A program made the translations under genes and the position numbers. The notes under the pieces were generated by a model. The model saw only the letters and a list, made by a program, of their open reading frames with translations, had not been told where the DNA came from and did no database searches. From positions 62,001 to 126,000 of the IMG/VR virus record IMGVR_UViG_3300047560_000921: a stretch of DNA of 64,000 nt, one strand, 5' to 3'. The number at the start of each line of letters is the position of its first letter. Position 1 is the first letter of the stretch. Positions 35,726-49,495 of this stretch are shown here, piece after piece.

Positions 35726-37775
35726 GTTCAATGTAATATTTGTTAATCAGCCGTACACAGACATAGAGCTAGCCGAAATGTGTAATGGCAAAACAACATG
35801 GTTTGTTAACGGTGAAATACAAGACGCAGAAGTATTTGACGGATTTGACTGGGGGTTCACACCAGTGGGCTACGAGTCAAAAAACTTGCACATGTGGGTA
35901 TGGCCAGACAGGAGCTTTTGGTTAGCTAAATTGATTCCTGCCAGATGGGACCTAGGTTATGTGCAATATATTACCGAACCAAAACGTAGAGTTACAGTTA
36001 GTACATATTACAACGGTGATGCACAATCTATGCTAGAGTATTTGCCGCCTACATACGATTTGAAATACGAACATGTTTGGTTATTTGACGTTACAACAAC
36101 AGACGGCAATGACATAGAGGCAGTTAGAATATCTTATGTTTCCGAGCCACAAGGCTTAAAAATCGTAGATAAAACTACAAAAAATGTCTTTAATTTAGTT
36201 AAAAATCCTGCCCTGCCTGACAGGGCATACGTAGGCATAGACACCAGCAACAAATTCCACTATAGTCAAGGAAAGTATAGACATGTATGGAACTTGGGCG
36301 GAGATGTTACCCTGCCTAATTATGACGTATGGGCTTATAGTTTAGAACCTGCTACATTTGTGGGTACAGTAGTAGAAGGCAAATTGGAAGTAACTGATTT
36401 TTACAAAGATATGACATGGGAAGTCAATCCGTTATTTGAAAATATTAAGTTTGCCGATTTCAATTTTGACTACAAGCCCTTGGCAGACAAAATGAATCTA
36501 GTACATACGTGGTACCTAGACTCTAGCTACACACCTCCAGGCGAACGTATATGGGCAGTTAGATTAACTCCTACTAACAGTTGCATGGGAGAGCTGGACA
36601 TGGGCCAACTTAGTTTAAACTTAACACCTAAAGTCATAGTGAACCCAGACTTCCAGTTGTATGATTGGAACAACGTTGTTAGCAAGTTCACACCCAGCTA
36701 CGATAGTTTGCAGTTTTTACATGTATGGTATTGCGAAGGAACAGATAAGAAGTACGGCGTTAAGATATCCTTTACAGATACAACAACAGGATACAAAGAG
36801 CATGGCTATGCTCGCCCATTTATGACAGAATGGAGCATGGGCCCGGGCGACACCAAACTGTATTGGCATTTTGATAAAGACTGTTACCCTGTTCCGCAGT
36901 GGAACAGAAAGTTTATGCCAGCTAGAGGTAATGAGTCTAAGGTGCATGTGTTTACGATGACTAATCCCAAGACTGGCCGTGTAACAGATTGGACAGGATG
37001 TTACCTTGTACCTAACGGTGTAGTACTTACAGACAAACTACGTAAGTCAGCAGTTAAGTGCTTTGAGCATGGCTGCACCGAGCAAGAGTTTGATATTGTG
37101 TTTTTAAGCAATGGCGAACCATATGCAGACGCAAACTTTGCCAAGCTAGAAAAGTTAGTACATGATAAGTCTAAGCTACACAGGGTAGATAGAGTTAAAG
37201 GTATCCTGGAAGCACACAAGGCCGCCGCCGATATTGTTACTACGGAAATGTTTTACCTAGTAGATGCAGACTGCGTCATTGAGGGTAGCTTTGCATTTGA
37301 CTTATATCCTAAATCCCATGACCGGGACACTGTATATGTTTGGCATGTACGTAACCCTGTCAACGGTTTAACATATGGATATGGTGGCGTAAAATTATTC
37401 CCCACACAGTTATTAAGAGACACTAAAGAATGGAAAATAGACTTAGCTACAAGCATTGGGGCAAAGTTTAAAGTATTGCCTAGAACAATAGGCTCTACAG
37501 AGTTTAACTGCGATCCGGAAACAGCATGGCGTAGTGGATTTAGAGAAGCAGCTAAACTTGCCAGCAAGATTATTAAAAATCAAGTTGATGCAGAAACAGA
37601 TCGTCGACTTGAAACATGGTGTACAGTTGATTTAGGTGTACCCAACGGAGAACATGCTATGCAAGGAGCACAGTGTGGCCGCACATGGGCACAAAACCAT
37701 CCTAGTTTAATTGATAAAATTAACGACTTCGAATGGTTACACAAACAATGGTTAAATTATGTTACTACAGAGTAA
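35691..37775 (+). CDS. Repeat-containing protein with C-terminal family B glycosyltransferase domain (start uncertain)
   Basis: C-terminal FDIVFLS.GEP, VDAD, NGLTYGYGGVKLF, GFRE..KL, INDFEWL; N-terminal H[VMT]W repeats. Confidence 0.7.
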   Translation: MIDLNNITQTSKFNVIFVNQPYTDIELAEMCNGKTTWFVNGEIQDAEVFDGFDWGFTPVGYESKNLHMWVWPDRSFWLAKLIPARWDLGYVQYITEPKRRVTVSTYYNGDAQSMLEYLPPTYDLKYEHVWLFDVTTTDGNDIEAVRISYVSEPQGLKIVDKTTKNVFNLVKNPALPDRAYVGIDTSNKFHYSQGKYRHVWNLGGDVTLPNYDVWAYSLEPATFVGTVVEGKLEVTDFYKDMTWEVNPLFENIKFADFNFDYKPLADKMNLVHTWYLDSSYTPPGERIWAVRLTPTNSCMGELDMGQLSLNLTPKVIVNPDFQLYDWNNVVSKFTPSYDSLQFLHVWYCEGTDKKYGVKISFTDTTTGYKEHGYARPFMTEWSMGPGDTKLYWHFDKDCYPVPQWNRKFMPARGNESKVHVFTMTNPKTGRVTDWTGCYLVPNGVVLTDKLRKSAVKCFEHGCTEQEFDIVFLSNGEPYADANFAKLEKLVHDKSKLHRVDRVKGILEAHKAAADIVTTEMFYLVDADCVIEGSFAFDLYPKSHDRDTVYVWHVRNPVNGLTYGYGGVKLFPTQLLRDTKEWKIDLATSIGAKFKVLPRTIGSTEFNCDPETAWRSGFREAAKLASKIIKNQVDAETDRRLETWCTVDLGVPNGEHAMQGAQCGRTWAQNHPSLIDKINDFEWLHKQWLNYVTTE

Positions 37776-38583
37776 AGACTTATTATACGGACTAGACGAG
37801 TACATTACAGTACAAACAAATCCTAAGTTGTTCAGAGCAATCTACAACTACATACATCATAAAAGTACAGAAAACAGGAATGCTATAGCAGATGGCGTTC
37901 CGTACATGTTACGCACTAAAACTTTAGCGACCTTGGATAGACTTGATAACAATGATACAGACGTAGACGTACTAATTGATTTGTTTTTAACTTGTCATGC
38001 AGTTGATGCAAAGTTTATTAGTAACCTGCGTACAGCAGTAAAAGAATTTCCAGAAGTTAATTGGCGCGATGGCCTGAGCAGATTCCAAATGCAAAGTAAG
38101 GTATGGGCCGCAAACATCTTAAAGAGCTATGACTTGGGTAATGTATATTTGTGTGGCGGCTGGATAGGGACACTAGCCCGTGTAATATTTGATGTATCTA
38201 AGTCAACTGCTACTATTACTAGCTTTGACATAGACGATGTTGCCAATAAAGCTAGCATGATACTAAATCTAGAATTAGCTAGTTCGGGTAAGTATGCGGC
38301 AGTAAATCAAGACATATACACTTTAGATTACACAGTTCCTGACACAGTAGTAAACACTATCTGTGAACATGTACCAGACTTCCAGCGCTGGCTGGATATG
38401 ATTCCTAGCGGCAAGTTAGTGTTATTGCAAACAAACAATATGTTTGAAATGACAGACCATGTAAATTGTGTAGAAACTTTAGAAGAATTTAAAACGCAAT
38501 GCCAGGACGTTGACATTGCGTATTCGAATACAATCAGTTATGCTGGGTGGCACAGATTTATGATTGTTGGAGTTAAACGTTAA
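37759..38583 (+). CDS. Class I SAM-dependent methyltransferase-like
   Basis: LCGGWIG (motif I-like), SFDID, NTICEH, RFMIVG. Confidence 0.6.
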   Translation: MLLQSKDLLYGLDEYITVQTNPKLFRAIYNYIHHKSTENRNAIADGVPYMLRTKTLATLDRLDNNDTDVDVLIDLFLTCHAVDAKFISNLRTAVKEFPEVNWRDGLSRFQMQSKVWAANILKSYDLGNVYLCGGWIGTLARVIFDVSKSTATITSFDIDDVANKASMILNLELASSGKYAAVNQDIYTLDYTVPDTVVNTICEHVPDFQRWLDMIPSGKLVLLQTNNMFEMTDHVNCVETLEEFKTQCQDVDIAYSNTISYAGWHRFMIVGVKR

Positions 38584-38888
38584 CCAATGTAAACGTCAAA
38601 CTGGCAGTTGTTAGTAGTACACCACTCGTCCATTAACATACCGCGTTGAATCATCAAGTCTTCGTTAACGTTAACAAAGTCTCGCAGGTCGTTGTCATTT
38701 GTAAACTCTAAAGTAACTGTACTAGTTAACCTATCCTCGCTTACTTCAACTCGTGTACCTACGAACCCGTCGTGCTCCATGGCCCGATTACGCATCTGTT
38801 CCATAATGGGATGATCCCTGTATTCTGCGAAAAAGAACTCAACATCTGGACTAGGTCTTTTCATAATAGTAATGATTTTAATGCTCAT
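38580..38888 (-). CDS. Small hypothetical protein (possible ferredoxin-like/ABM-like fold)
   Basis: AGGAG RBS and its own TAAATA at 38907-38912. Confidence 0.65.
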   Translation of the reverse strand: MSIKIITIMKRPSPDVEFFFAEYRDHPIMEQMRNRAMEHDGFVGTRVEVSEDRLTSTVTLEFTNDNDLRDFVNVNEDLMIQRGMLMDEWCTTNNCQFDVYIG

Positions 38889-38909: not shown

Positions 38910-39536
38910 TTAGTTTATCAAATGTTCGGCATCTTTTAAGACGGATACTTCGGGATCGTGTTCGGACTTTAGTGTGTAGCTTTTTATAATAACTGGGGTA
39001 GGATTTCTGCCCTCTAGAATCCCTAAAATATTACTGCCGAATTCATACTTTGCCCTGCTATACGGTGGTACGATTTCTACAATTTTTACATCGTATAAAT
39101 GATTTCTACTTTCGGGCCCAAGTCGATGTATACCTTTTACTGTACTTTTTGTGTGCTGGTAGTCTCTTGCCATGTAGCATACCTTCCGTCCAAAGTTATT
39201 TGCACTGTCCAGGAATACTGGAGTTAGAAACTCGTTAATTACATGCAAGTTTTCTTTTAGCATAGAAAACTTATGCCTGTCGGCAAACACATTGCCTATA
39301 GTAGCGTAAGGCATACTAGACCAATGAGACCTGGTAACAAACATAGACATTTCTTCCTGCTCATTAAACCAACCCCATGCGCTATGTCCCAGCTCATTAT
39401 TAGCACTGATGTTAAATGATTTTCTAAAGTATTGGTCAATAGCAGTAGTAATCTTAACTTTCATGTTAGACCCGTGCGCTTGATATATTTCAAGCATACG
39501 TGGCAAGTCGGCACTAGTGAGTTTGCGTACACTCAT
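38910..39536 (-). CDS. GNAT-like protein, paralog A
   Basis: VRKLTSADL..MLEI start; collinear with 43558..44175. Confidence 0.5.
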   Translation of the reverse strand: MSVRKLTSADLPRMLEIYQAHGSNMKVKITTAIDQYFRKSFNISANNELGHSAWGWFNEQEEMSMFVTRSHWSSMPYATIGNVFADRHKFSMLKENLHVINEFLTPVFLDSANNFGRKVCYMARDYQHTKSTVKGIHRLGPESRNHLYDVKIVEIVPPYSRAKYEFGSNILGILEGRNPTPVIIKSYTLKSEHDPEVSVLKDAEHLIN

Positions 39537-40603
39537 AGATAGTCGGTGATGTTAATATTGTCAACAAATTCAAACTTGTCAGTAATAAAGTTATGGACAC
39601 GGCGATATCTAAACACACCTGGCAAGCTAGGGAATTTAGTCTTACGTGCAAGATAGTCTTCGTCTTTAGACAATTTGTAAATTAGTTCTTTAGCAGGGAA
39701 TTTGTAACTAACCCATGTATCTTTGATTTTACTATTGGGATTGTTCAAACTCCATTGTTGCCATTCTTCGCCTGCCCAAAAGTGACATACATGCCTATCC
39801 ATCCATGCATCGTCAATATTCTGCGAATCGTTCTTGTGACTTAAAATACGGAACTCTACTGCCTGCCACTTCATTGCAAAGTTCTGATACCACAAGTAGT
39901 CACTCCATGTTTTAATTTCCCAGGGGCAGTTTTTAATGAGCAGTTCCATTTGATCCAAGAACCACTTAGTGCGCTCTTCGTTACCAATCCTGGCATTAAA
40001 GAAATCAAAGGCAAACACTTTATAGTTGCTGTTGATTACAGATTCTGTGCCAAAGAAGTCGATGCTAGACTTTAATGTTAAGCTACCAAATACGTTATCT
40101 GCAAACTCACCAGTGATAACATAGTTGAAGCTGTTGAAGTAATTCTCAAAGCTATTGGAACTTTCTGTCTTGTAGTTACGCTTAATAACAGTTTCGTACA
40201 AGGTAGGATTTTCCTGTATACTATTGCTGTTTAAGATAATTAGCAATCGTTCTTTGAATTCTTTACTAGCATAGGTATGCATTATGTTTACAATTAGCGT
40301 ACTATCGATGCCCCCGCTATACATAATAACAGGTCTTAGATGTGTAGTCCTAACGTGTTGTTCAATCTTTTGCCATGTTAAGTAACATAGTTCTTCGAAC
40401 GTGTGCGTAAACGTTCTTACTTGAGGCATGGGATGCCTGTTAACTAGGTTAACAGGAAACTTAATAGTATTAGTTCTATCTACTAAGCTGATGCCACTGT
40501 TAAATGCTTTACTGAATACACTGTACTTGTCTAAAGCAGGGTATTGTTTACACCATTCTGGCTTGTATAAATCTAACTGGTTGTAATAAAGTAGTGCGCT
40601 CAT
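39533..40603 (-). CDS. Asparagine-synthetase C-terminal-like adenylating enzyme (no glutaminase domain)
   Basis: MYSGGIDST PP-loop and ITGEFADNVFG (AsnB GEGADE.FG motif); K..AK..I motif. Confidence 0.75.
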   Translation of the reverse strand: MSALLYYNQLDLYKPEWCKQYPALDKYSVFSKAFNSGISLVDRTNTIKFPVNLVNRHPMPQVRTFTHTFEELCYLTWQKIEQHVRTTHLRPVIMYSGGIDSTLIVNIMHTYASKEFKERLLIILNSNSIQENPTLYETVIKRNYKTESSNSFENYFNSFNYVITGEFADNVFGSLTLKSSIDFFGTESVINSNYKVFAFDFFNARIGNEERTKWFLDQMELLIKNCPWEIKTWSDYLWYQNFAMKWQAVEFRILSHKNDSQNIDDAWMDRHVCHFWAGEEWQQWSLNNPNSKIKDTWVSYKFPAKELIYKLSKDEDYLARKTKFPSLPGVFRYRRVHNFITDKFEFVDNINITDYL

Positions 40604-41220
40604 AGTAAAATATTCAAAAATGTCTCTTTGTGTAAGTTATCCATAACTTGTTTAACTTCGTTGGCAGTAGTTGCAGCCTTTAACAGTCTTAGGTATTTGA
40701 TTCTAAACCATTCAGTCTTTGTCATCATTTCCAAGTGCATGGTATACTGTAAAATGATTTGGTCAGCCGCTTGCTCTGCGGTGCAGTTGTCTAGCTCTGC
40801 ATAGTCTAATACTAATTGTACATTACTCAAGCCGACTAAGTTTGCATCATAGCCGTGTGTCCTGAGTAGTACAGCCTGGTCGTATTTCATTTTGTATACT
40901 TCGTCTTGGCCGGCACATACTTCTATTTCCTTAACTCTAGCTAGATTAATCTTAGTAAGGATATCATAGTAGCTCCATTGCTTGTACTCGACGAACTTGC
41001 GATATTCGTCGATGTTTTCGCCCGGACTGTATACTATTTTAGATCCACGTAAAATAAAATCACTAGGGTTAGATTTAAATTGCTGTTCTAGTGACTTATC
41101 TAAGTCTCCTGTATATACGTGCGTATCAAAGAAACATTCGTTAACAAAATATAAATGTTTCTTCTCTGGTGTAGAAAGCAAAACCCGATTAAGGCTGTTA
41201 GTTAATATGTGTACCCACAT
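40600..41220 (-). CDS. Hypothetical helical protein, weakly like tail-fibre assembly proteins
   Basis: GQDEVY..KY.QA...YA......EQAADQI...R......AATT.NEV pattern. Confidence 0.45.
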   Translation of the reverse strand: MWVHILTNSLNRVLLSTPEKKHLYFVNECFFDTHVYTGDLDKSLEQQFKSNPSDFILRGSKIVYSPGENIDEYRKFVEYKQWSYYDILTKINLARVKEIEVCAGQDEVYKMKYDQAVLLRTHGYDANLVGLSNVQLVLDYAELDNCTAEQAADQIILQYTMHLEMMTKTEWFRIKYLRLLKAATTANEVKQVMDNLHKETFLNILL

Positions 41221-41231
41221 GTCTGTCTCTC

Positions 41232-42779
41232 TTATAAATTTAAAAGTCTGTTTTTATAAAGCTGGAACCATTCTGCTTTTTTGTCTTTAAGGAAGTCTGC
41301 ACTAACGTTTTTAACGCTCACGCCTGCTAAGTCGTCGGCAGTAAGTCCAGTACCGTTCATCCACATAAACTGGAAGAACCCTGCAGGCTTAATACGACCG
41401 CTACGATATCCGCGCATAATATATTCGTCTGCAATAGCCCATGCCTTAGGTAAAGTCATATGCGGATTGCTCCACATGCTCCATCTAAAGAAGCTGTTGT
41501 TAGCAACACCTTTGTTGACGATGTTATATCCGTAAGATTCGGGATCAGCTTCGAACTTGCTAGGCCAGATTTTCTTTTCGTTAATGTTGAAGCCCAAAGG
41601 TTCAACTGTATATCCGTCTAGTGGACAGTTTTCGTCTTCGACCCACTTCATCCATTCGCGGAATGTTTCTTCCGTTTCGTGCGGCAAGCCTACAATAAAC
41701 CCACTGCTCATTGTAATGTCTTTGCCCCATGCTTCGTCTCGCAACCAGTGTAATAGTTCTTTGCTTTTCTCTGGGTGCAGTCCTTTGCCAATGGCTAACG
41801 CACTCTTATGGTTTAAACTTTCTAATCCAAATACACAGGTTTTAAGTCCGCTTTCTTTTAGCAGGGGTGCCATGTCCCTATTAGCATGGATTAAATCATG
41901 TCTTAGGTATGCACTAAACTGTATCTTAAAAGGAAGTTGTGAAAAGACTTCGTTGTATAGCTTTTCTACTTTATAGATGCTGTCGTTGTATGTATCGTCT
42001 GCAAAGATATAGTTAGTAATGCCCCACTTTTCGTAGTTACGAATGAACTCTTCTTTTAACGGCGCACTATCCTTGATGTAGTCGAACTTGTCTTTGCCGT
42101 TCATAGGAAAACTACAAAAGTCGCATCTAAAGATACATCCACGACTAATTTCAATGGGCAACACTTCGTTTTCGTAGATTAAGTCATTGTCTTCCCATAG
42201 TACTTGACTGGTTTGAAAATTCCACTCAGGGTCTTTAATCCAATCGACTTCAACTTGATGCTCGTTGATAGGAACCATTTTAAGTACAGTTTCGTCGTAA
42301 GGCTTACCTGCCAAGAAGTTAGCGTACTCTACTGTAGTATGGTCAGCATAGCCATGAATGAAGCAGTCTACTAGTTTACTGTTCTTGTATTGGCTACGTT
42401 GCCCGCCTAGTACAATTTTTGTCTTGGGATTTACTTGTTTGATATGATTAATAAACGCATAACTGACTTCAGGCTTAAACGGAAAGTCTTCAGTATATCT
42501 TAATTCGCGCCTATAGTGGTTAGGCCTACTTTTATCGCTTAGTGCTTGGTCTCTGATAGCATACAAGGTGCTACTGAATCCAACGAATAATGTGTTAGGA
42601 CCTACAAACTTGTCTACAATTTGTTTAAGCTCGTCCAAGCTCCATTCGGTTAAGTAGTCGACAACTTGTACTGTATAACCGTTCTTTCTTAATTCCGTAG
42701 CAATGCGATAAGCACCTAGTAGGCGCTGAAAAACCGTAGTGCTAGTGAACTCCGTAAAAATTACAATGTCTGCTGTCAT
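41232..42779 (-). CDS. Cobalamin-binding-domain radical SAM enzyme
   Basis: LGAYRIAT.LR.NGY.VQVVD, VGFS, IVLGG (B12 domain); EISRGCIFRCDFC; FADDT; FGLES; FIVGLPHET. Confidence 0.9.
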   Translation of the reverse strand: MTADIVIFTEFTSTTVFQRLLGAYRIATELRKNGYTVQVVDYLTEWSLDELKQIVDKFVGPNTLFVGFSSTLYAIRDQALSDKSRPNHYRRELRYTEDFPFKPEVSYAFINHIKQVNPKTKIVLGGQRSQYKNSKLVDCFIHGYADHTTVEYANFLAGKPYDETVLKMVPINEHQVEVDWIKDPEWNFQTSQVLWEDNDLIYENEVLPIEISRGCIFRCDFCSFPMNGKDKFDYIKDSAPLKEEFIRNYEKWGITNYIFADDTYNDSIYKVEKLYNEVFSQLPFKIQFSAYLRHDLIHANRDMAPLLKESGLKTCVFGLESLNHKSALAIGKGLHPEKSKELLHWLRDEAWGKDITMSSGFIVGLPHETEETFREWMKWVEDENCPLDGYTVEPLGFNINEKKIWPSKFEADPESYGYNIVNKGVANNSFFRWSMWSNPHMTLPKAWAIADEYIMRGYRSGRIKPAGFFQFMWMNGTGLTADDLAGVSVKNVSADFLKDKKAEWFQLYKNRLLNL

Positions 42780-43546
42780 TAAAGTCTTTTAAGTATAGGT
42801 AAGAAAATCATACACGGATCTAGTTCCCACCATTTTTCACCGAAGTTATAGTTAGCAGGATGCTTGTGATGGTTATTGTGCCAACCTTGTCCCCAAGCAA
42901 AGTATCCTAATAGCGGCACGTTGCGGCTATTATCGTCGATTTCATGATTCCTATATCCAAAGCCTTTAAGGTGGCAGAATAAGTTGATGCAAGCCTCTTG
43001 GTGTATGCCAGTAATCATGGGCAACAAGATTAAGCCAACTGCAAGTTGCCAGTTGAGTAATGCTGTAGCAATGATGATACCCCATACTATCTTATAGTAG
43101 TTAGTATGTACCCATACTTGGAATTTGTCACGTAATAAGTCTACGGCATATTTCAAGTTAACATCGGTTGGTGCAATTTTCCAACTCCAGCTAAGGTAAG
43201 CATGGAACTTGCCATGAATAGGACTGTGTATGTCTCTTGGTTTGTCAGAATGACTATGATGATATCCTCTGTGTAAAGCTACCCAGAAAATAGGACTGCC
43301 TTGTCCAGCCATGCATCCAAGTATAGTAATAACTTTTCTTGTAAACGCACTCATCTCTGGAATACACTTGTGACTAAGCACACGGTGTAATCCAATGGCA
43401 CTACCTAAACCACTAATTAAAACCCAGCCAACGGGCCAAAACCATAGGTACGACAAATCGCCCCATAGTACTAGTGCTGTTGCACCTAGCAAGGCCGCTA
43501 AGTGTACAGGCCAAAATAATTTAATGCTGTGTCCGGTAGTTTTCAT
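42779..43546 (-). CDS. Membrane acyl (delta-9-type) desaturase
   Basis: Three His boxes HRVLSH, HRGYHH, WHNNHH; DIHSP; hydrophobic segments. Confidence 0.9.
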   Translation of the reverse strand: MKTTGHSIKLFWPVHLAALLGATALVLWGDLSYLWFWPVGWVLISGLGSAIGLHRVLSHKCIPEMSAFTRKVITILGCMAGQGSPIFWVALHRGYHHSHSDKPRDIHSPIHGKFHAYLSWSWKIAPTDVNLKYAVDLLRDKFQVWVHTNYYKIVWGIIIATALLNWQLAVGLILLPMITGIHQEACINLFCHLKGFGYRNHEIDDNSRNVPLLGYFAWGQGWHNNHHKHPANYNFGEKWWELDPCMIFLPILKRL

Positions 43547-43551
43547 ATGCG

Positions 43552-43557
43552 TATTTA
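43552..43557 (-). promoter_or_regulatory. Late promoter TAAATA 5 nt before the desaturase ATG
   Basis: TAAATA-CGCAT-ATG; same spacing as at 10084 and 14028. Confidence 0.55.
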
Positions 43558-44175
43558 TTATTCTATCTCTTTGCGAAACTCTGGCTTTAAGTACTGCATA
43601 GTAACAACTAAGTCAGTGGGCCATAGTGCGCTGTTCATTAACCACATCCATTGGTCCAGGAACGGCGGCCTTGTGTTAGCGGGAATTACATTCATTACTA
43701 CGCTATCATAACGTTCCTGGCGTTGCTTAACATACTTGGGCCAAATGCGTTTGTGTGCAAGGTAGTAACGCTTAGGGTATGCCATAATGTACTGAAAGCA
43801 ATCACGCTTTTCTGCAAAGTCAATGGCGTGTTGCATTACTTCTACGAGTCCATTACGGTTACCTAAACTGGGCACACGTTCTGTTCTGCGAGTAATAGCT
43901 TTTTGTATGTACCACATGTTAACGTCAGGATTGAAGTACTGGGTCATGGCCGCATACAATTTGTTATCGTTAGTTTCGTCTACATATCCCCACATCATGA
44001 ACTGGGGATTATCTTCGCCTAAATATAAATTGGCAAGATTATTGTGCTTGTTCATGGACATGTCTGCCCTATAATAAGGAACACTGCTTACGTCAACACC
44101 AGCAAAGGTATTGTAGTCTCGCTGTATCTCATCGATTTGGTCAAAGTAACTAAGGTCAAGTTTTACGATTTTCAT
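43558..44175 (-). CDS. GNAT-like protein, paralog B
   Basis: IVKLD...I.EI, WGY.DE, AI.FAE, YD..V..VIPANTRP...LKPE. Confidence 0.5.
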   Translation of the reverse strand: MKIVKLDLSYFDQIDEIQRDYNTFAGVDVSSVPYYRADMSMNKHNNLANLYLGEDNPQFMMWGYVDETNDNKLYAAMTQYFNPDVNMWYIQKAITRRTERVPSLGNRNGLVEVMQHAIDFAEKRDCFQYIMAYPKRYYLAHKRIWPKYVKQRQERYDSVVMNVIPANTRPPFLDQWMWLMNSALWPTDLVVTMQYLKPEFRKEIE

Positions 44176-45107
44176 TCTAGTGTCTTAATAAAGTCTGTGG
44201 CTAACATTTCAAACCTATGGTCGTTATAAGGTATGTACTGTAGCATTTCTTGCTGAGCCTGTACGTTTAACAACTTCAATGTTTCGTACCCATGATACTT
44301 CTTTCTAGGTTTCAAGAAGAAGTACTTATTATATATGGAATACTTGCTACTTGCAATACTTAATTTACCAACTAGTTTATCTGCTAGCAAATCTTGTACA
44401 ATCGAATCGTTAACATAGGCTTTCATAATCTCAGGGGTGTAACTAAAGAACTCACTGATAACAGGGCGTTGGTTGAGTACACTGTACTTTGGTACACTCA
44501 AGTCATTATTTTCCCTAACATAATAAACCCAATTGTATTCTTGCTTTGGTTCATCAGCTAGCCACGATTTCCAGTTGAATACTTTTTCAAAGAATACTTC
44601 GCCTGTGCCTAGTACGGGAATATCGTCTTGGATTTTGTCTAGTGCCCACAAACATTGTATTTGTGCAAGTTGAATACTTTGATACTTCATACCAATTGGT
44701 ATGTACTCTTTACTACGATAAAACTCAACAATGTCTATCTCTAGGATTTTGTATTCTACGTTGTAGTAGTTACAAAAGTCTATGGCATACTTAATGTCGT
44801 GGTCATTGTATCCGTCCTTGAACCGAATAATAGTGGCACGAACACGTCGCTTTAGTCCTGCCCAAATAAATGCTTGAAGTACAAGTTCGCTGTCAATGCC
44901 GCCACTGAAGAATACATTAAACTTTTGCCCAGGGTATTTGTCTGCAAGCATTTTGCATACGTTAAGGCTTTCTTGTTTAAAATCTCCAACGGGACGGCTT
45001 GGTTTGCCCCAATGCATTTTAAATGTGCTGTAAGGATTCTTACGTAATGCAAAAGGAACGTTGTCGTAAGTCCAATGGAAGTGGTTGTTTTCTGTGTACT
45101 GGATCAT
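44172..45107 (-). CDS. PP-loop (asparagine-synthetase-like) adenylating enzyme
   Basis: FFSGGIDSE, YA..FC, VLGTGE, R.KYHGYE. Confidence 0.7.
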   Translation of the reverse strand: MIQYTENNHFHWTYDNVPFALRKNPYSTFKMHWGKPSRPVGDFKQESLNVCKMLADKYPGQKFNVFFSGGIDSELVLQAFIWAGLKRRVRATIIRFKDGYNDHDIKYAIDFCNYYNVEYKILEIDIVEFYRSKEYIPIGMKYQSIQLAQIQCLWALDKIQDDIPVLGTGEVFFEKVFNWKSWLADEPKQEYNWVYYVRENNDLSVPKYSVLNQRPVISEFFSYTPEIMKAYVNDSIVQDLLADKLVGKLSIASSKYSIYNKYFFLKPRKKYHGYETLKLLNVQAQQEMLQYIPYNDHRFEMLATDFIKTLE

Positions 45108-45970
45108 TGTGTAAATGGAGGCATCTTATCAAATTCGTGGTCAATGCTGATACGTATAAAACTTCTACGCCCTTCACTGCCTTCTAAGATTTCCATATCT
45201 CCGCGTCTGTGTATTGTAGCCCAATTGTCAAATACTAGCACGTCATTGATTTCCCATTTGTGTTCTAGGAAGTCAGTTGCTTCGATTTGACTAGTGCTTA
45301 ACTCTCTCATGAATTCGTTTGAAAGGCGTAGTTCGCCTTCTTCTTTGTCTATGACTGTTCGTAAGATCCATGCGCCGTCATTGCCAAATGCATTATAACG
45401 TATAAACTCTTCGCCTGTCCATGGATGCTTGTCTAGTGCCGGATACCATTTTTGATTAGTAAAGTTTTTCTGCCAGCTATTGTACAAGAACTTTAAGTTG
45501 TCCAAGTTAATGTTATGCTTGTCCTTTTCAGTCCATTCTCGTCTAATGATACCTAAGTCTGCAACATCAGTGCTACCGCCAGTCATGTTAGTAGGTAAAT
45601 CCTTACAGTACAACAATCGGAATGGGAACGGCTCCAGGCCACGCTCATTGGCAATGTCACAGTGCCATGTAAGGCTCTTGTATAGTCTAGGATAGCTTTT
45701 ATCATCGTATTCTGTATATGCGACACCGTTGCTGGCAACCTTAAAATGTTCTTTAGTATGATTCTGATACATATCCGCAGTCCATGGGCGCCCGAACTTC
45801 TTACTAAATGCAGCCATTTCATCTGCACTTACATCTATGTTTTTAAACACTAAAGCCTTACGACGGTAAATTAATTCACGCAGTTCGATGTCGTCAAAAG
45901 CCATAATCTCGTCGAAGGTACCTTCTACAATGCTACCAACATCTTTTGTTATAGGAGTATGTTTAATCAT
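45104..45970 (-). CDS. TauD/TfdA-family dioxygenase
   Basis: LVFKN, WHCD, GGSTDVAD, HPWTG, HKWEINDVLVFDNWATIHRR; probable start ATG 45970. Confidence 0.85.
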   Translation of the reverse strand: MIKHTPITKDVGSIVEGTFDEIMAFDDIELRELIYRRKALVFKNIDVSADEMAAFSKKFGRPWTADMYQNHTKEHFKVASNGVAYTEYDDKSYPRLYKSLTWHCDIANERGLEPFPFRLLYCKDLPTNMTGGSTDVADLGIIRREWTEKDKHNINLDNLKFLYNSWQKNFTNQKWYPALDKHPWTGEEFIRYNAFGNDGAWILRTVIDKEEGELRLSNEFMRELSTSQIEATDFLEHKWEINDVLVFDNWATIHRRGDMEILEGSEGRRSFIRISIDHEFDKMPPFTQ

Positions 45971-45971
45971 A

Positions 45972-46565
45972 TTAGTAATCGTAAAATCTAGGGTTGTGGG
46001 CAACGTCGAAAATAATGTGCAGTCTATCCGTAGTGCCATTATTTCCACCCCAGTGTTTAGCTCTATTGTTAAAGCGCCACAGTTCGCCAGGTTTACATTT
46101 AATGCTTTCAGTTTCGGTTATGAACTCAACATCAGGATTAGTAGCCAGCACAATATGATACCTATTATGAATAGCAAAATACAGTCCGGGATCAACGTGC
46201 GGGTATATCTTACCGCCAGGCACTAGCTTTGAAACGTATGCTCTACCCAAATGGCCAGCTGGTATTAAAGTCATTGCATGTTCAATTAATTTTCTAACTT
46301 CGGGCAATTGCGTATAGTGTTCTGAGTCTACGATACTAATTGCATGTTGGTCTGCTAGGTCTTTTGCATCCCAGTGTTCCCCTTGATTCCTGCTTAAAAT
46401 TTCCGCAGGAGGATGAATACGCAAATGAATACTTTCGACTTCCTCTAACGCAGGGCTAATGGCTTTCACTTTGGTATGACTAGCAAACCAATCACTGTGT
46501 GCTAATACTTCTTCTAGCGCGGCTGTAACATCTATGTTAGATGCAATGTGGTCAAAATATATCAT
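45972..46565 (-). CDS. AspH-like hydroxylase
   Basis: LGRAYVSKLVPGGKIYPHVD...RYHIVL.TN...GELWRFNN...H...N....RLHIIFD. Confidence 0.85.
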   Translation of the reverse strand: MIYFDHIASNIDVTAALEEVLAHSDWFASHTKVKAISPALEEVESIHLRIHPPAEILSRNQGEHWDAKDLADQHAISIVDSEHYTQLPEVRKLIEHAMTLIPAGHLGRAYVSKLVPGGKIYPHVDPGLYFAIHNRYHIVLATNPDVEFITETESIKCKPGELWRFNNRAKHWGGNNGTTDRLHIIFDVAHNPRFYDY

Positions 46566-47116
46566 TTGTTGTAAGTAGAAAACACAAGATGCACTCTAGG
46601 TTTGAAACTGGCATTCAATGCAGTGTGCCAAACAGTGCTTACTAATGTATATAGTCTACCTTCCTCTTCCATTCTGTACAAGCCCTTCTCCGTGGCTATA
46701 AAATTATTAGGATTGGTGCTAATAGGGATATGATACCTAACTGCATCGCTGTCCTTGTGCCAACTATAACAAGTCTTTGGCCTTAATAACATAAGCCTAA
46801 TCCTACCAAGTGGCAACGGACTAACTTCTTGTACCTTGTTAATTACTTCTTCCCAATATCTTCCTTTTACATAAGAAGATATGTGAGTATAGTTTTCTTC
46901 TTGGTCTAGCTCTATGTTATTTTGTCTATCGTATAAGCTGCCAACACCGTCATACATTTGTTCTTTTATGGTATCAAATTTGCCGCTGTGACTTAAGGCA
47001 ATTTGATTAGCATCCTTGTGGAAAGGATATTGACGATACAGCACGTCTAGTTCTAGTTTTAACCGTATAGGGTCGAATTTAACGTCTAACTTTTGTACGT
47101 CTAGTGTATCGCTCAT
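46562..47116 (-). CDS. AspH-like hydroxylase
   Basis: GRIRLMLL.P..CYSWHKD...RYHIPI.TN...HTALN....RVHLV. Confidence 0.85.
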   Translation of the reverse strand: MSDTLDVQKLDVKFDPIRLKLELDVLYRQYPFHKDANQIALSHSGKFDTIKEQMYDGVGSLYDRQNNIELDQEENYTHISSYVKGRYWEEVINKVQEVSPLPLGRIRLMLLRPKTCYSWHKDSDAVRYHIPISTNPNNFIATEKGLYRMEEEGRLYTLVSTVWHTALNASFKPRVHLVFSTYNK

Positions 47117-47709
47117 ATAGTACTCGTATCGCCTTTGTATGTTACATTACTTATGTAACTCTTCTCATCGGCGATGTCCACCGCAAAAGCAATTACTTTA
47201 ACTAATTGACTTACAGACATAATACTGTTAGGCTGTCTAATTTGTGCGTAGGTATAAGTGCTAGTGTCTGTCAAGAAATCTGTTTTAACGTGTCCTGGCT
47301 TTACATTAATGATTTTACACTTGCAGCCAGCAGCCATATTCATTTGATAGCCTGCATCGTCTAATGCTTTCTTGTGTAGTCCGTAAGGGTATACTTTGCC
47401 CATGTGCATACATGCATCTCCTGCTAGACTACTGACATTGACAATCATGTAGTTGGGTTTCTTTTGATGAAAGCCGTACCAACGTTGTAGCAAGTCTACT
47501 TGTGCATACCTAAAGTACGCATTGTTGATAAACAAGTCGCAGTCCAGAGTTTCGTTTATAATACGCTCTTGGTCGTCACCCTTACTGATATCATAGCCAT
47601 TGGATCTACTGAACCCAATAACTTCAATACCTAGGCCTGTATAGTAGTCATATAGCGCCTTACCGATGCCTTTTGTGTGTCCCGTTATTGCTATCTTATT
47701 TGGAGTCAT
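47113..47709 (-). CDS. Short-chain dehydrogenase/reductase
   Basis: ITGHTKGIG, FINNA, NVSS, YGLHK (YxxxK), PG.VKT. Confidence 0.85.
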   Translation of the reverse strand: MTPNKIAITGHTKGIGKALYDYYTGLGIEVIGFSRSNGYDISKGDDQERIINETLDCDLFINNAYFRYAQVDLLQRWYGFHQKKPNYMIVNVSSLAGDACMHMGKVYPYGLHKKALDDAGYQMNMAAGCKCKIINVKPGHVKTDFLTDTSTYTYAQIRQPNSIMSVSQLVKVIAFAVDIADEKSYISNVTYKGDTSTI

Positions 47710-48313
47710 TGCATTGCTCGCATGTTATTTCTTTTAAGTATCCGATAAAGTCTAAATCGGAACCAGGTTTGAGTGGCATAGTTGCAACCCATTGGCAACA
47801 TTCTTGTGGCATATATCCGGGCGGCAATGGCCCGCATACACCTAACTTAGTGTCGTGCATTTTAAAGTTGTAGCCACCGTTGGCATTAACTAAGTCTATA
47901 AACTTACTGAAACTTCTTTGTTTGTCTTCCCTGCTAATGAACACGCAATCTAAATTTAAACTGCGGGCAACAGCTATTTGTCTAGGAATCAAATACGCAC
48001 TATTAACGTATCTGTCACTAGGTTCGAACTTCTGTAAATGTGTATGACGATACTTTGGTGGGATGTAAAATCTAGCACTAACTCTAGCTTTACCTGGACC
48101 CCATCTGTCCTGTTGAATTTGCATACCGCTAAAAGCTAAAACCTCACTACCGCGCAAGGCAACAGTGAGGCTGGCAAAGTCTTTAGGCTGGATTCCAACG
48201 TAATTGGCTTTTAGTTCATCATCTCCCAGTTGAATTTCTTCTACTACTTGATTGAACAATGCCAAATACGTTGTGTCTCTGCATAAGTCAGTTACAATTA
48301 CTTGTTCAGCCAT
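47696..48313 (-). CDS. GNAT-like acyltransferase
   Basis: LAFSG, ARVSARFYIPPKYR, Q..VAR.L..DCVFISRE. Confidence 0.55.
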   Translation of the reverse strand: MAEQVIVTDLCRDTTYLALFNQVVEEIQLGDDELKANYVGIQPKDFASLTVALRGSEVLAFSGMQIQQDRWGPGKARVSARFYIPPKYRHTHLQKFEPSDRYVNSAYLIPRQIAVARSLNLDCVFISREDKQRSFSKFIDLVNANGGYNFKMHDTKLGVCGPLPPGYMPQECCQWVATMPLKPGSDLDFIGYLKEITCEQCNDSK

Positions 48314-49185
48314 TTCTCAGTGAACTCTCGAATCTCTCGTTGACCCATACCGTACTGCTTGGCAATACCGTTAACATCACGGAAGTCTTCTAGTAGGTTC
48401 AGCCACTTTTCTTCGCTAAGTAGACGTTTAATCAAATCAACCTCCATGCGACTGCATGTTACACTGTGTTGTTCGTAATCTTCGAAGGCCTCGCACACTT
48501 GAGGGAATAGTGCCTTAACCAAGTTGTACATAGCATTGGCAAGTTCTCTAATCTCCCATTGGGCATGAGGATCAGCACGTAGGCGAACCATATGCAAGAA
48601 GTTCTTCATGTTAGCTTTCCAGTATAGCTCGGTATATCCGCCAACTGGTAATACCATACGACTAAGTTCACGGGCAACACCGTCACCGTCTTTACCTAGT
48701 AGGTATTCGTAGTCCTTGAAGCTATTGTTGTAAGCTCTCATGAACGCATGTTGATAGTCCTGACGTTGTGCTGTGTCCCACCCGTCGAACTCTTCGCGTC
48801 CTTGCTTGTTTAATGTGCTTTGTGGTGCAATTTGATTAAGTTCGGGAATGTAAAACTCATCGGTCATTACGCTGTAACGTGCGCTGTATTCGTTAATACT
48901 AGCAGTACGATGACGTACAAGTTGGCGCATAACAAAGATAGGTACCTTAATGTGGAATTTAACTTCGCACATTTCAAACGGTGTAGTGTGCTTGTGACGC
49001 ATCAAGTAACGAATCAAGTTTCTATCATCGCTTACTTGCTTAGTGCCTTCGCCGTAACTTACTCGTGCGGCTTGTACTACTGCCGCATCGTTGCCCATAT
49101 GGTCAACAAGTCCTACAAAGCCATGGTCCAATAAAGGAACATACGTTTTGTCATTTTCAAAATCAATATCACTTCTTAGTGTCAT
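48298..49185 (-). CDS. thyX: Flavin-dependent thymidylate synthase ThyX
   Basis: AARVSY, H.TPFE, RHRTASINEYSARY signature, HAQWEIR; probable start ATG 49185. Confidence 0.95.
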   Translation of the reverse strand: MTLRSDIDFENDKTYVPLLDHGFVGLVDHMGNDAAVVQAARVSYGEGTKQVSDDRNLIRYLMRHKHTTPFEMCEVKFHIKVPIFVMRQLVRHRTASINEYSARYSVMTDEFYIPELNQIAPQSTLNKQGREEFDGWDTAQRQDYQHAFMRAYNNSFKDYEYLLGKDGDGVARELSRMVLPVGGYTELYWKANMKNFLHMVRLRADPHAQWEIRELANAMYNLVKALFPQVCEAFEDYEQHSVTCSRMEVDLIKRLLSEEKWLNLLEDFRDVNGIAKQYGMGQREIREFTEKWLNK

Positions 49186-49495
49186 CTGTGTCTCCGCCGC
49201 CTTCAAAATGTTTTGCTAGCAATGTGCTAACATACTTTTTCATGTGTTTCTTAATCCTAGTCAAGTCCATGGTAATCTCTACGTCGGTAACCATGTCCTT
49301 GGTCTCGATAAGACCTTCTTCTTGTAGTTTGTCTGGTAAGCTGTCTAGCTTTGCTATTTCTTTTCCAGTGAACCTAATAGTTTGTCCAGTAACTAAGTGA
49401 ACTAGCACTTCTTCGATGTACTCGGCAGGTACATGATTCATAACAACATCATCTAGGATGTCGTCAAAGCCACGATCTTTTCTTCTAATAGCCAT
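49169..49495 (-). CDS. Hypothetical protein
   Basis: 108-aa ORF packed within the operon. Confidence 0.65.
   Translation of the reverse strand: MAIRRKDRGFDDILDDVVMNHVPAEYIEEVLVHLVTGQTIRFTGKEIAKLDSLPDKLQEEGLIETKDMVTDVEITMDLTRIKKHMKKYVSTLLAKHFEGGGDTDDTKK

What the first reader, a model, noticed from the sequence alone, without database searches (positions are those of the whole stretch)
38910..45107. Duplicated two-gene module: PP-loop adenylating enzyme followed by a paralogous GNAT-like protein
Seen: 44172..45107 (SGGIDS) is followed by 43558..44175, and 39533..40603 (SGGIDS, GEFADNVFG) is followed by 38910..39536. The two downstream proteins (205 and 208 aa) align end to end: KIVKLD..I.EI / SVRKLT..MLEI; MWGYVDE / AWGWFNE; RYDSVVMNVIPANTR / LYDVKIVEIVPPYSR; LVVTMQYLKPE / VIIKSYTLKSE. 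Both pairs overlap by 4 nt (ATGA). Known: glutaminase-less AsnB homologues (lasso cyclases, beta-lactam synthetases) adenylate a carboxylate and form an amide with a substrate amine. Inference: this is a recurring ligase plus transferase/adaptor unit that I cannot assign to a described system.
Basis: partly seen in the sequence, partly recalled or inferred. Interest (0 to 1): 0.82.

Follow-up and report, generated by a model that had tools for sequence, protein, structure and literature searches.

The report
Paired PP-loop ligases in phage island
A freshwater jumbo phage carries two distantly related ATP-using "PP-loop" ligases, each with its own small partner protein, as part of an unannotated operon shared by hundreds of uncultured phage contigs, and its product is still unknown.

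Summary
All four ORFs exist, both ligases carry SGGIDS, and both gene junctions overlap as ATGA. The two downstream proteins are homologous (hhalign 95.8%, E 7.8e-9, 188 columns) and both model as GNAT folds.

The interpretation needs correcting. This is not a recently duplicated two-gene unit. The ligases (PP-A, PP-B) are deep paralogues in an unannotated PP-loop clade. Partner B branches outside all PP-A-linked partners.

Only PP-A followed by a GNAT-like partner is widely conserved (48 of 73 testable viral loci). PP-B followed by a GNAT-like gene occurs only in this phage's close relatives. PP-B's near-universal partner is the upstream 206-aa gene (40600-41220), in 76 of 78 loci and also with an ATGA overlap.

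The recurring core operon is PP-A, GNAT-like, Δ9-desaturase-like, 206-aa family, PP-B. Cupin, TauD, methyltransferase-like and radical-SAM genes often accompany it, and it lies next to tail-fibre genes.

The PP-B family has 1340 clusters at 50% identity. None of the four proteins has a match in 50,697 sequenced phage records or a significant Pfam, PHROG or NCBIfam hit.

My best reading is a pair of adenylating amidoligases whose partners present the second substrate, within a tailoring pathway for an envelope or virion-surface molecule. The substrate is unknown.

The parts
44172..45107 (-). PP-A: stand-alone PP-loop ATP-pyrophosphatase-type ligase, 311 aa, SGGIDS at residues 68-73
   Evidence: ORF. 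A 20-sequence family profile matches NH3-dependent NAD synthetase 3fiu at E 1.4e-7 over 108 residues. At least 198 confirmed stretches in viral contigs. 108 unannotated clusters.
43558..44175 (-). Partner A: GNAT-fold protein, 205 aa, joined to PP-A by an ATGA overlap
   Evidence: ATGA overlap. AF2 model pLDDT 75.5, pTM 0.73. Foldseek finds 163 GNAT hits at E <= 1e-3. Homologues lie directly downstream of PP-A in 48 of 73 loci.
42779..43546 (-). Membrane di-iron desaturase-like protein, 255 aa, with three His boxes (HRVLSH, HRGYHH, HNNHH)
   Evidence: Pfam FA_desaturase E 1.1e-12. Present in 62 of 79 PP-A-anchored loci. Lies between the GNAT-like gene and the 206-aa-family gene in the core operon. 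Homologue in the Pelagibacter phage Mosig island.
41232..42779 (-). B12-binding radical SAM enzyme, 515 aa, inserted into the core operon in this lineage
   Evidence: Pfam Radical_SAM E 6e-16 plus a weak B12-binding hit. NCBIfam matches to PhpK and other B12-rSAM families. Beyond the close relatives it is found in only 1 of the 80 PP-B-anchored loci.
40600..41220 (-). 206-aa family: conserved upstream partner of PP-B, very divergent, no invariant residue, C-terminal half apparently helical; probable adaptor or specificity subunit
   Evidence: ATGA overlap with PP-B. 76 of 78 upstream ORFs of PP-B relatives join this family. 36-sequence alignment has no invariant column. No PDB or Pfam match.
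39533..40603 (-). PP-B: stand-alone PP-loop ligase, 356 aa, SGGIDS at 96-101 and GEFADNVFG at 165-173
   Evidence: Exhaustive HMMER search finds 1340 representatives at E <= 1e-3 and 921 at <= 1e-10. At least 492 confirmed stretches in viral contigs. PDB matches cover only the 30-residue PP-loop. ESM Atlas score 0.99 to unnamed viral clusters whose models resemble Asn_synthase-related proteins at TM 0.59.
38910..39536 (-). Partner B: GNAT-fold protein, 208 aa, deep paralogue of partner A, lacking the glycine-rich loop before helix a3; lineage-specific addition after PP-B
   Evidence: ATGA overlap. AF2 model pLDDT 63, pTM 0.65. Foldseek finds 183 GNAT hits at E <= 1e-3. hhalign against the partner-A family gives E 7.8e-9. 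Separate clade. Partner B profile hits in 7 of 80 PP-B loci.
38580..38888 (-). 102-aa protein that ends the minus-strand operon
   Evidence: ORF. Conserved in close relatives. Weak homologues follow PP-B relatives in L027 and L028 (E 5e-5). A terminator-like hairpin lies at 38521-38494 (such sites are no more frequent than chance overall).
45104..47709 (-). Tailoring oxidoreductases upstream of PP-A: TauD-family dioxygenase, two Asp/Arg-hydroxylase-type cupins and a short SDR-like protein
   Evidence: Pfam TauD E 6.6e-24, Asp_Arg_Hydrox E 4e-16 and 7.9e-7, adh_short E 1.5e-6. The 184-aa cupin co-occurs in 51 of 79 PP-A-anchored loci.
47696..49206 (-). 205-aa protein of unknown function and ThyX, at the head of the gene string
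   Evidence: Pfam Thy1 E 4.6e-59. ThyX lies next to the core operon in 18 to 30 loci. Its membership of the pathway is not shown.
37759..38583 (+). 274-aa protein, possibly a class I methyltransferase, on the convergent strand; a frequent companion of the core operon
   Evidence: Co-occurs in 49 of 79 PP-A-anchored loci. The only library hit is a weak NCBIfam match to trans-aconitate methyltransferase (E 0.009).

Best explanation
The region is the centre of a conserved but unannotated phage operon. Its core order is PP-A, GNAT-like partner, desaturase-like membrane protein, 206-aa adaptor, PP-B. In this lineage a B12-radical-SAM gene is inserted and a second GNAT-like gene (partner B) is appended.

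PP-A and PP-B are distant paralogues in a new clade of stand-alone PP-loop ATP-pyrophosphatases that lack a glutaminase domain.

Inferred mechanism. Each ligase uses ATP to adenylate a carboxylate or carbonyl oxygen of its substrate. An amine then displaces AMP to give an amide or amidine. The translationally coupled small partner takes the place that a glutaminase domain has in AsnB, NadE or GuaA and supplies or positions the second substrate. For PP-A that partner is a GNAT-fold protein whose family does not conserve the acyl-CoA loop. For PP-B it is a fast-evolving 206-aa protein with no invariant residue.

The product is then tailored by the membrane di-iron desaturase-like enzyme, cupin and TauD oxygenases, a possible methyltransferase and radical SAM enzymes. 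The operon embeds a membrane enzyme and lies in the hypervariable island beside tail-fibre genes. For those reasons the most likely target is a cell-envelope or virion-surface molecule, either lipid or glycan.

Shown: gene families, folds, homologies and conserved gene order. Inferred: the chemistry, the role of the partners and the target.
For: PP-loop identity: SGGIDS in both proteins, the PP-A profile against NadE at E 1.4e-7, and PP-A against PP-B families at 95-96% probability.

GNAT fold and partner homology.

The acyl-CoA loop is not conserved across the partner family, while R143, R155-Y156, R169 and K197 are.

Conserved adjacency: the 206-aa family precedes PP-B in 76 of 78 loci. A GNAT-like gene follows PP-A in 48 of 73 loci. 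All three junctions in the window have ATGA overlaps.

The core operon is seen in many divergent contigs. The desaturase-like gene is present in 62 of 79 loci, the cupin in 51 and the methyltransferase-like gene in 49.

Setting: the island begins directly after the baseplate wedge, the 3042-aa giant protein and a tail-fibre-like protein. A similar enzyme island abuts the tail fibres of Pelagibacter phage Mosig. Pelagimyophage 'host recognition clusters' are described in PMC7029224. In a Xanthomonas prophage the 206-aa-family gene and PP-B follow the tail fibre. In a Bdellovibrionales MAG they sit beside a carbamoyltransferase, a GDSL hydrolase and a cupin.
Against: No substrate, product or activity is known for any member.

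PP-loop enzymes normally perform both half-reactions in one active site, so a partner is not chemically required.

No sugar-nucleotide or acyl-carrier genes were detected in the window's island.

Conserved gene order among related phages may partly reflect shared descent rather than joint function. ThyX adjacency and the PP-loop precedents that act on nucleobases point towards nucleic-acid chemistry instead.
Confidence: 0.45

Rival explanations
1. One reading: a recently duplicated two-protein unit, ligase plus GNAT-like transferase or adaptor, in which the ligase adenylates a carboxylate and the GNAT-fold partner carries out or guides amide formation, operating twice in one pathway.
For: Both pairs are translationally coupled. 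The partners are homologous and so are the ligases. PP-A followed by a GNAT-like gene is widely conserved. The partner family lacks a conserved acyl-CoA loop, which would fit a non-CoA acyl donor such as an acyl-adenylate.
Against: Partner B is not nested among the PP-A-linked partners. PP-B followed by a GNAT-like gene is confined to one lineage and is interrupted in L007. PP-B's near-universal partner is the unrelated 206-aa family. The ligases align confidently over only 48-71 columns.
Confidence: 0.15
2. Nucleic-acid hypermodification: the ligases adenylate a nucleobase carbonyl or carboxyl group in DNA, nucleotides or tRNA, as TilS, QueC, ThiI and GuaA do, and the GNAT-fold partners add an acyl or aminoacyl group as Mom does, to protect phage DNA from restriction.
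For: ThyX lies next to the core operon in 18-30 loci. PP-A's best solved relatives act on nucleotides (NadE, ThiI, GMP synthase). The GNAT-like family conserves several basic residues. Phage Mu Mom is a GNAT-fold enzyme that uses Gly-tRNA to modify DNA (PMC13219725). 2OG oxygenases are common in DNA hypermodification.
Against: An integral-membrane desaturase-like enzyme lies inside the operon in most loci, which is hard to fit to DNA chemistry. None of the four proteins has a match in 50,697 phage records, which include the known hypermodifying phages. The phage also has a separate QueC-like gene elsewhere. The island sits among tail-fibre genes, not replication genes.
Confidence: 0.15
3. Peptide or protein modification: a RiPP-like pathway or tail-fibre maturation system in which AsnB-like ligases form isopeptide or macrolactam bonds or amidate carboxylates, the 206-aa protein recognises or presents the substrate, and the B12-rSAM, Asp/Asn-hydroxylase-type cupins and TauD tailor side chains.
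For: The enzyme set (AsnB-like ligase, GNAT, B12-rSAM, Asp/Asn-hydroxylase type, TauD) resembles RiPP tailoring sets. The 206-aa family has no invariant residue, as expected of a binding rather than catalytic protein. The island lies by tail fibres, and in the Xanthomonas prophage the pair directly follows the tail fibre, where an assembly factor is usually found.
Against: No precursor peptide gene was identified. There is no protease with a conserved catalytic triad. Pfam Asn_synthase is not reached. The ligases lack the N-terminal domain that I recall lasso cyclases and beta-lactam synthetase retaining. The desaturase-like membrane protein is unexplained.
Confidence: 0.15
4. No joint pathway: the genes are independent auxiliary or 'stuffer' genes that have accumulated in a hypervariable island, and their adjacency reflects shared descent of related phages.
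For: Such islands are known to be mosaics (PMC7029224 and PMC3037559). Accessory content varies between loci. Promoter-like and terminator-like sites are no more frequent than chance, so transcription units are undefined.
Against: Stop-start overlaps join the pairs. The same five-gene order persists at 25-35% protein identity and across rearranged flanks. The 206-aa-family gene with PP-B also occurs in bacterial and prophage contexts without the rest of the phage backbone.
Confidence: 0.1

Closest known systems
NH3-dependent NAD+ synthetase (NadE) and other single-domain PP-loop ATP-pyrophosphatases (ThiI, QueC, LarE, TilS N-domain)
   Same: SGGxDS PP-loop. The N-terminal nucleotide-binding domain of PP-A aligns with NadE over 108 residues (E 1.4e-7). 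These are stand-alone enzymes without a glutaminase domain. The expected chemistry is adenylation followed by nucleophilic displacement.
   Different: The C-terminal 150-250 residues match nothing solved. No curated family cut-off is reached. Each ligase has a dedicated, translationally coupled partner protein.
Asparagine synthetase B family ligases with an inactive or no glutaminase function (beta-lactam synthetase, carbapenam synthetase, lasso-peptide cyclases)
   Same: PP-loop plus a later G-E-x-x-D-x-x-F-G motif in PP-B, which I recall as resembling the AsnB synthetase-domain motif (from memory, a lead only). ESM Atlas neighbours of PP-B have models resembling Asn_synthase-related proteins at TM 0.59.
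   Different: Pfam Asn_synthase is touched by only 3 of 50 family members at about E 1e-3, below the cut-off. Only 60-95 residues precede the PP-loop, so there is no N-terminal Ntn-type domain. No precursor peptide or protease partner was found.
PP-loop 'N-acetyl sugar amidotransferases' (PseA, WbpG, LfnA type) together with GNAT N-acetyltransferases (PseH type) in nonulosonic-acid and O-antigen pathways (from my own knowledge)
   Same: A PP-loop amidoligase and a GNAT enzyme co-occur in a surface-glycan tailoring cluster. The setting near host-recognition genes is similar, and a related Bdellovibrionales locus has a carbamoyltransferase and a GDSL enzyme.
   Different: NCBIfam gave no hit to that family. 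No sugar-nucleotide enzymes were found in the window's island. The GNAT-like partners do not conserve the acyl-CoA loop.
Phage Mu Mom, a GNAT-fold enzyme that uses Gly-tRNA rather than acyl-CoA (PMC13219725)
   Same: A phage-encoded, highly divergent GNAT fold with a non-canonical donor. It shows that a phage GNAT-like protein need not be an acetyl-CoA-dependent acetyltransferase.
   Different: No sequence similarity was tested or seen. Mom acts alone, whereas here the GNAT-like protein is coupled to a PP-loop ligase.
Host recognition cluster / hypervariable island of pelagimyophages and cyanomyophages (PMC7029224, PMC3037559), for example the Pelagibacter phage Mosig island
   Same: An enzyme-rich island beside tail-fibre genes. 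Mosig has Asp/Arg-hydroxylase, FA-desaturase, TauD, methylase, N-acetyltransferase and radical SAM genes next to its tail fibres.
   Different: tblastn of the four proteins against 50,697 phage records, which include Mosig, gave no match, so Mosig carries no detectable PP-A, PP-B, partner A or partner B homologue. The 206-aa family was not searched there. The window's phage has a PA5oct/Atu_ph07-like backbone, not a T4-like one.

Membership tests
PP-loop ATP pyrophosphatase superfamily | SGGxDS/T pyrophosphate-binding loop after the first beta strand | tested here: met
   SGGIDS in both proteins. S, G, G, D and S are invariant or nearly so across 50 PP-B-family and 20 PP-A-family sequences.
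PP-loop ATP pyrophosphatase superfamily | Nucleotide-binding alpha/beta domain alignable with solved members beyond the loop | tested here: inconclusive
   Met for PP-A: 108 residues aligned to NadE 3fiu at E 1.4e-7. For PP-B only about 30 residues align, to LarE, TilS and AsnB at E 0.007-0.09. The PP-A/PP-B profile link (96%) carries PP-B in indirectly.
PP-loop ATP pyrophosphatase superfamily | ATP to AMP plus PPi turnover via an adenylated substrate | not testable with these tools
   Needs an enzyme assay.
Asparagine synthetase B family (Pfam PF00733; includes beta-lactam synthetase and lasso cyclases) | Significant match to the Asn_synthase domain model | tested here: not met
   Neither PP-A nor PP-B hits it at E <= 0.01. 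Three of 50 PP-B-family members hit it, best E 0.0011, below the curated cut-off. NCBIfam asn_synth_AEB gives E 0.024 over 40 residues.
Asparagine synthetase B family | N-terminal Ntn-type (glutaminase or vestigial) domain preceding the synthetase domain | tested here: not met
   The PP-loop starts at residue 68 in PP-A and 96 in PP-B, in proteins of 311 and 356 aa. No such domain was detected.
Asparagine synthetase B family | Overall fold of the synthetase domain | tested here: inconclusive
   Only indirect evidence: the model of an ESM Atlas neighbour cluster (score 0.99) resembles Asn_synthase-related proteins at TM 0.58-0.59. PP-A and PP-B themselves were not modelled.
GNAT superfamily | GNAT fold (b1-a1-a2-b2-b3-b4-a3-b5-a4-b6-b7) | tested here: met
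   AF2 models of both partners show this order of elements. Foldseek returns 163 and 183 PDB hits at E <= 1e-3, and the 50 best listed for each are all GNATs. The partner B model is of modest confidence (pLDDT 63).
GNAT superfamily | Match to a curated GNAT sequence model (Pfam Acetyltransf_*) | tested here: not met
   No hit for partner A or B or for five divergent family members. Only the C-terminal half of the 389-391-aa double-GNAT relatives touches Acetyltransf_1/7/10, weakly.
GNAT superfamily | Acyl-CoA pyrophosphate-binding loop (Q/R-x-x-G-x-G/A) between b4 and a3 | tested here: not met
   Partner A's close relatives have an invariant S-x-G-N-x-N-G just before a3. No such position is conserved across the 41-sequence family. 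Partner B has no glycine there.
Lasso-peptide type system (precursor, B protease/RRE, C cyclase) | Partner protease with a conserved Cys-His-Asp triad, and a precursor peptide gene | tested here: not met
   The 206-aa family has no invariant or nearly invariant residue in 36 sequences. The partner B family has no invariant Cys. No precursor was identified.
PseA/WbpG/LfnA-type N-acetyl sugar amidotransferase pathway | Match to the curated amidotransferase model, and sugar-nucleotide genes in the cluster | tested here: not met
   The NCBIfam scan at E <= 0.1 lists only LarE, AsnB, NadE and TilS. No nucleotidyltransferase, dehydratase or aminotransferase was found in the island.
Tail-fibre-proximal hypervariable island ('host recognition cluster') | Enzyme-rich variable block embedded among baseplate and tail-fibre genes | tested here: met
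   Baseplate wedge at 14414-17641, giant ORF at 17643-26771, tail-fibre-like protein at 27477-28529, and then the island from 29972. Content varies among relatives. The comparison is to PMC7029224.

The most novel reading that the evidence does not exclude
Uncultured freshwater phages, together with some CPR-labelled, Bacteroidota and proteobacterial genomes, share a previously undescribed two-ligase pathway. In it, PP-loop enzymes have replaced the usual glutaminase domain with dedicated partner subunits: a CoA-independent GNAT-fold protein for one ligase and a fast-evolving adaptor for the other. The pathway would build a new amide-linked surface lipid or glycan, or a nucleic-acid modification, that affects host recognition or superinfection.
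Probability: 0.3. Interest if true: 0.8.

Novelty: new variant of a known kind. Interest (0 to 1): 0.6.

Why it matters
The two ligase families and their partners are abundant. The PP-B family has 1340 clusters at 50% identity and hundreds of viral contigs. Yet they have no significant hit in Pfam, PHROGs or NCBIfam, no solved relative beyond the PP-loop or N-terminal ATP-binding domain, and no match in any of 50,697 sequenced phage records.

They form a stable operon beside tail-fibre genes, in the kind of island long suspected to affect host recognition but never explained biochemically. Defining the product would assign function to a large block of viral dark matter. It could also reveal a new way for PP-loop enzymes to receive their second substrate.

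Tried and rejected
- Direct BLASTP and the first small-family hhalign of the partners were not significant. They were superseded by larger families.
- tblastn of all four proteins against 50,697 phage records gave no match. megablast of the region gave none either.
- PHROGs, Pfam and NCBIfam gave nothing significant for the four proteins or the 206-aa protein.
- PDB profile searches reached only the PP-loop for PP-B and found nothing for the 206-aa family.
- I tested whether the other ~205-aa proteins in the operon (40600-41220, 47696-48313) or L007's inserted 251-aa ORF are further GNAT-like paralogues. They are not.
- I tested whether ORFs downstream of other PP-B relatives are cryptic GNAT-like partners. 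They are not.
- I tested whether the ~204-220-aa family upstream of PP-A in other phages is related to the 206-aa family or the partners. It is not, and it is absent from the window.
- NCBI cluster look-ups gave no names.
- The 'Acinetobacter phage MD-2021a' desaturase hit was discarded because the region looks bacterial.
- The promoter and terminator scan was uninformative, with counts at chance level.
- Read laying was not used. Synteny in independent contigs from other samples already supports the assembly.

Full report
**1. Observation**

They are PP-A at 44172-45107 (311 aa), partner A at 43558-44175 (205 aa), PP-B at 39533-40603 (356 aa) and partner B at 38910-39536 (208 aa). SGGIDS occurs in both larger proteins, and GEFADNVFG occurs in PP-B.

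Both junctions read ATGA, so the stop of the ligase overlaps the start of the partner.

**2. What the window is**

The window is part of a 231-kb viral contig. It carries a gp5-like baseplate hub-lysozyme, a DNA ligase, a 5'-3' exonuclease and ThyX. The baseplate hub is about 42% identical to those of the PA5oct and Atu_ph07 jumbo myoviruses. Near-identical sequence is found only in freshwater metagenomes, from several studies.

**3. The minus-strand gene string (38580-49206)**

In order of transcription, the genes are:

- ThyX
- a 205-aa protein of unknown function
- a short SDR-like protein
- two Asp/Arg-hydroxylase-type cupins
- a TauD-family dioxygenase
- PP-A
- partner A
- a fatty-acid-desaturase-like membrane protein
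- a B12-binding radical SAM enzyme
- the 206-aa protein
- PP-B
- partner B
- a 102-aa protein

A convergent plus-strand string at 29972-38583 holds a twitch-domain radical SAM enzyme and otherwise unannotatable proteins. The whole island begins directly after the baseplate wedge (14414-17641), a 3042-aa giant ORF and a tail-fibre-like protein.

**4. Are the two small proteins homologous GNAT-like proteins? Yes**

- Pairwise BLASTP (E 0.077) and a first profile comparison (E 0.063) were not significant, although the alignment was collinear.
- With 9 and 13 family members, hhalign gave E 0.0018 over 184 columns. The 20 control comparisons among cluster families gave at most 37 aligned columns.
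- I then enlarged the partner A family to 28 sequences taken from genes downstream of PP-A relatives, excluding every partner B relative. hhalign against the partner B family gave 95.8% probability, E 7.8e-9 and 188 end-to-end columns. The HMM built from that partner-B-free set also hit partner B relatives, at E 6e-6 after one round of enlargement.
- AlphaFold models of both proteins show the canonical GNAT order of elements. Partner A has pLDDT 75.5 and pTM 0.73; partner B has pLDDT 63 and pTM 0.65.
- Foldseek against the PDB returns only GNATs among the 50 best hits listed for each model.
- No Pfam GNAT model is reached.
- The acyl-CoA-binding loop is not conserved across the family. The conserved positions are a W-G pair and several basic or aromatic residues in the C-terminal half: R143, R155-Y156, R169 and K197.

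**5. Are the two ligases related?**

They are related, but distantly. Pairwise, only the SGGIDS motif aligns.

The PP-A family against a 130-sequence PP-B-family profile gives 94.8-96% probability over 48-71 columns, reaching upstream of the PP-loop. A permissive alignment pairs C-terminal motifs, W-S-[SY]-K...I-Y and K-x-[KH]-G, over 276 columns. That extension is suggestive rather than statistically secure.

A PP-A family profile matches NH3-dependent NAD synthetase at E 1.4e-7 over 108 residues. PP-B matches solved structures only at the 30-residue loop.

Pfam Asn_synthase is touched by 3 of 50 PP-B relatives, at about E 1e-3. The ESM Atlas places PP-B at 0.99 with unnamed viral clusters whose models resemble Asn_synthase-related proteins at TM 0.59. 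The AsnB label is therefore only a lead.

**6. Is the pairing conserved elsewhere?**

An exhaustive HMMER search with the PP-B profile found 1340 representatives at 50% identity (921 at E <= 1e-10), mostly full-length at about 360 aa. At least 492 stretches in IMG/VR encode relatives.

Results from 80 viral loci anchored on PP-B:

| Feature | Result |
|---|---|
| PP-B-family genes examined | 88 |
| Upstream same-strand ORFs of 150-300 aa that join the 206-aa family | 76 of 78 |
| Loci with a partner B profile hit | 7 of 80 (5 single-domain partner B proteins, all in close relatives; 2 double-GNAT proteins, L051 and L067) |
| Single-domain partner B directly after PP-B | 4 of the 5 (displaced by an inserted gene in L033) |
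| Other downstream ORFs related to the GNAT-like family | none |

In L007, the most divergent relative that keeps both genes, a 251-aa gene separates PP-B from partner B.

Results from 79 viral loci anchored independently on PP-A:

| Feature | Result |
|---|---|
| GNAT-like partner directly downstream | 48 of 73 testable loci |
| GNAT-like partner directly upstream, as a 391-aa double-GNAT | 2 loci |
| Desaturase-like gene in the locus | 62 of 79 |
| 184-aa cupin in the locus | 51 of 79 |
| 274-aa methyltransferase-like gene in the locus | 49 of 79 |
| PP-B-family gene within 5 kb | 38 of 79 |

Gene maps show one recurring core order: PP-A, GNAT-like, desaturase-like, 206-aa family, PP-B. In some contigs the same genes are split into two convergent strings. 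The window's lineage adds the B12-rSAM gene and partner B.

A maximum-likelihood tree puts the partner B family on a long branch outside all PP-A-linked partners, with 100/100 support. Partner B is therefore not a recent copy of the neighbouring partner A.

**7. Other contexts**

- The same 231-kb phage has a second copy of the 206-aa-family gene followed by a PP-B-family gene, about 65 kb away (L078).
- Some contigs carry two such modules in tandem.
- Cellular genomes also encode the module. These include many MAGs labelled as Patescibacteria (CPR), Bdellovibrionales MAGs, and isolates such as Aquimarina, Tenacibaculum, Bernardetia, Neolewinella and Xanthomonas.
- In Xanthomonas sp. GPE 39 the pair follows baseplate J and a tail-fibre gene in a Mu/P2-like prophage.
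- In a Bdellovibrionales MAG it sits with a PP-A-like gene, a carbamoyltransferase, a GDSL hydrolase and a cupin.
- The 206-aa family has no invariant residue in 36 sequences. It has no PDB or Pfam match.
- Pelagibacter phage Mosig has a similar enzyme island beside its tail fibres, with hydroxylase, desaturase, TauD, methylase, N-acetyltransferase and radical SAM genes. It has no detectable PP-A, PP-B or GNAT-like partner homologues.
- Such islands are described as 'host recognition clusters' whose enzymes have no established role (PMC7029224; PMC3037559).

**8. Interpretation**

What is shown:

- Two deep paralogues of a new stand-alone PP-loop clade.
- Each has a translationally coupled small partner. 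PP-A has a GNAT-fold protein. PP-B has a fast-evolving protein with no conserved residues, and in this lineage also a second GNAT-fold paralogue.
- They lie in a stable operon with a membrane di-iron enzyme and oxygenases, inside a tail-fibre-proximal island.

What is inferred, from established PP-loop chemistry (AsnB, NadE, GuaA, TilS, QueC):

- Each ligase adenylates a carboxyl or carbonyl group and an amine displaces AMP.
- The partners stand in for the missing glutaminase domain by supplying or presenting the second substrate.
- The target is a lipid or glycan of the envelope or virion surface.

I hold this at about 0.45.

**9. Limits**

No multimer prediction was possible. No profile-profile search against Pfam or PDB profile libraries was available. 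No isolate carries the system, so there is no experimental handle yet.

**10. Verdict**

The conserved units are PP-A with its GNAT-like partner and the 206-aa family with PP-B, inside a five-gene core. It is not a duplicated ligase-GNAT module. I rate it a new variant of known enzyme kinds: abundant, unannotated and of unknown product.

Noticed in passing
window 11335-11970 (+): A third PP-loop protein, 211 aa and QueC-like (Pfam QueC E 1.3e-8). It hints at a 7-deazaguanine pathway in this phage. The flanking ORFs 10631-11335 and 11868-12653 have no PDB sequence match.
   Followed up: partly
window 14414-29577 (+): Baseplate wedge (phrog_10646, 1090 bits), then a 3042-aa giant ORF (17643-26771) and a tail-fibre-like protein with a Peptidase_G2/IMC domain (27477-28529), lying directly before the enzyme island.
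   Followed up: partly
L078 (same 231-kb contig, about 65 kb from the cluster); also L064, L069, L117: A second module of the 206-aa-family gene followed by a PP-B-family gene in the same phage, preceded by genes of about 490 and 306 aa. In L117 the 490-aa gene is a double methyltransferase.
   Followed up: partly
L039, L049, L065, L100: Two modules of the 206-aa-family gene followed by a PP-B-family gene, in tandem.
   Followed up: no
L051:1429-2598, L067:1341-2516, L068: Double-GNAT proteins of 389-391 aa directly upstream of PP-A. The N-terminal half is partner-like and hits both the partner A and partner B profiles in L067. The C-terminal half weakly matches canonical GNAT models.
   Followed up: partly
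L171 (Xanthomonas sp. GPE 39): The 206-aa-family gene and a PP-B-like gene lie directly after baseplate J and a tail-fibre gene in a Mu/P2-like prophage, in the position where a tail-fibre assembly factor usually sits.
   Followed up: partly
window 45104-46048 (-): The listed TauD ORF (GTG start, 314 aa) overlaps the upstream cupin gene by 77 nt. Related contigs call it as 288 aa, so the true start is probably near 45970.
   Followed up: no
L198:4340-4999 and 35 other loci: A distinct family of about 204-220 aa lies directly upstream of PP-A in most other phages. It is absent from the window, where TauD occupies that place.
   Followed up: partly
window 33613-35025 (+): Strong NCBIfam match to the twitch-domain radical SAM family NF033640 (320 bits), within a convergent operon (29972-38583) of proteins with no library hits.
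   Followed up: no
L190 (GenBank CAKLQH020000002.1, 'Acinetobacter phage MD-2021a'): The region holding the desaturase hit carries trpB, trpC, btuB and baeSR and looks like bacterial chromosome rather than phage.
   Followed up: no
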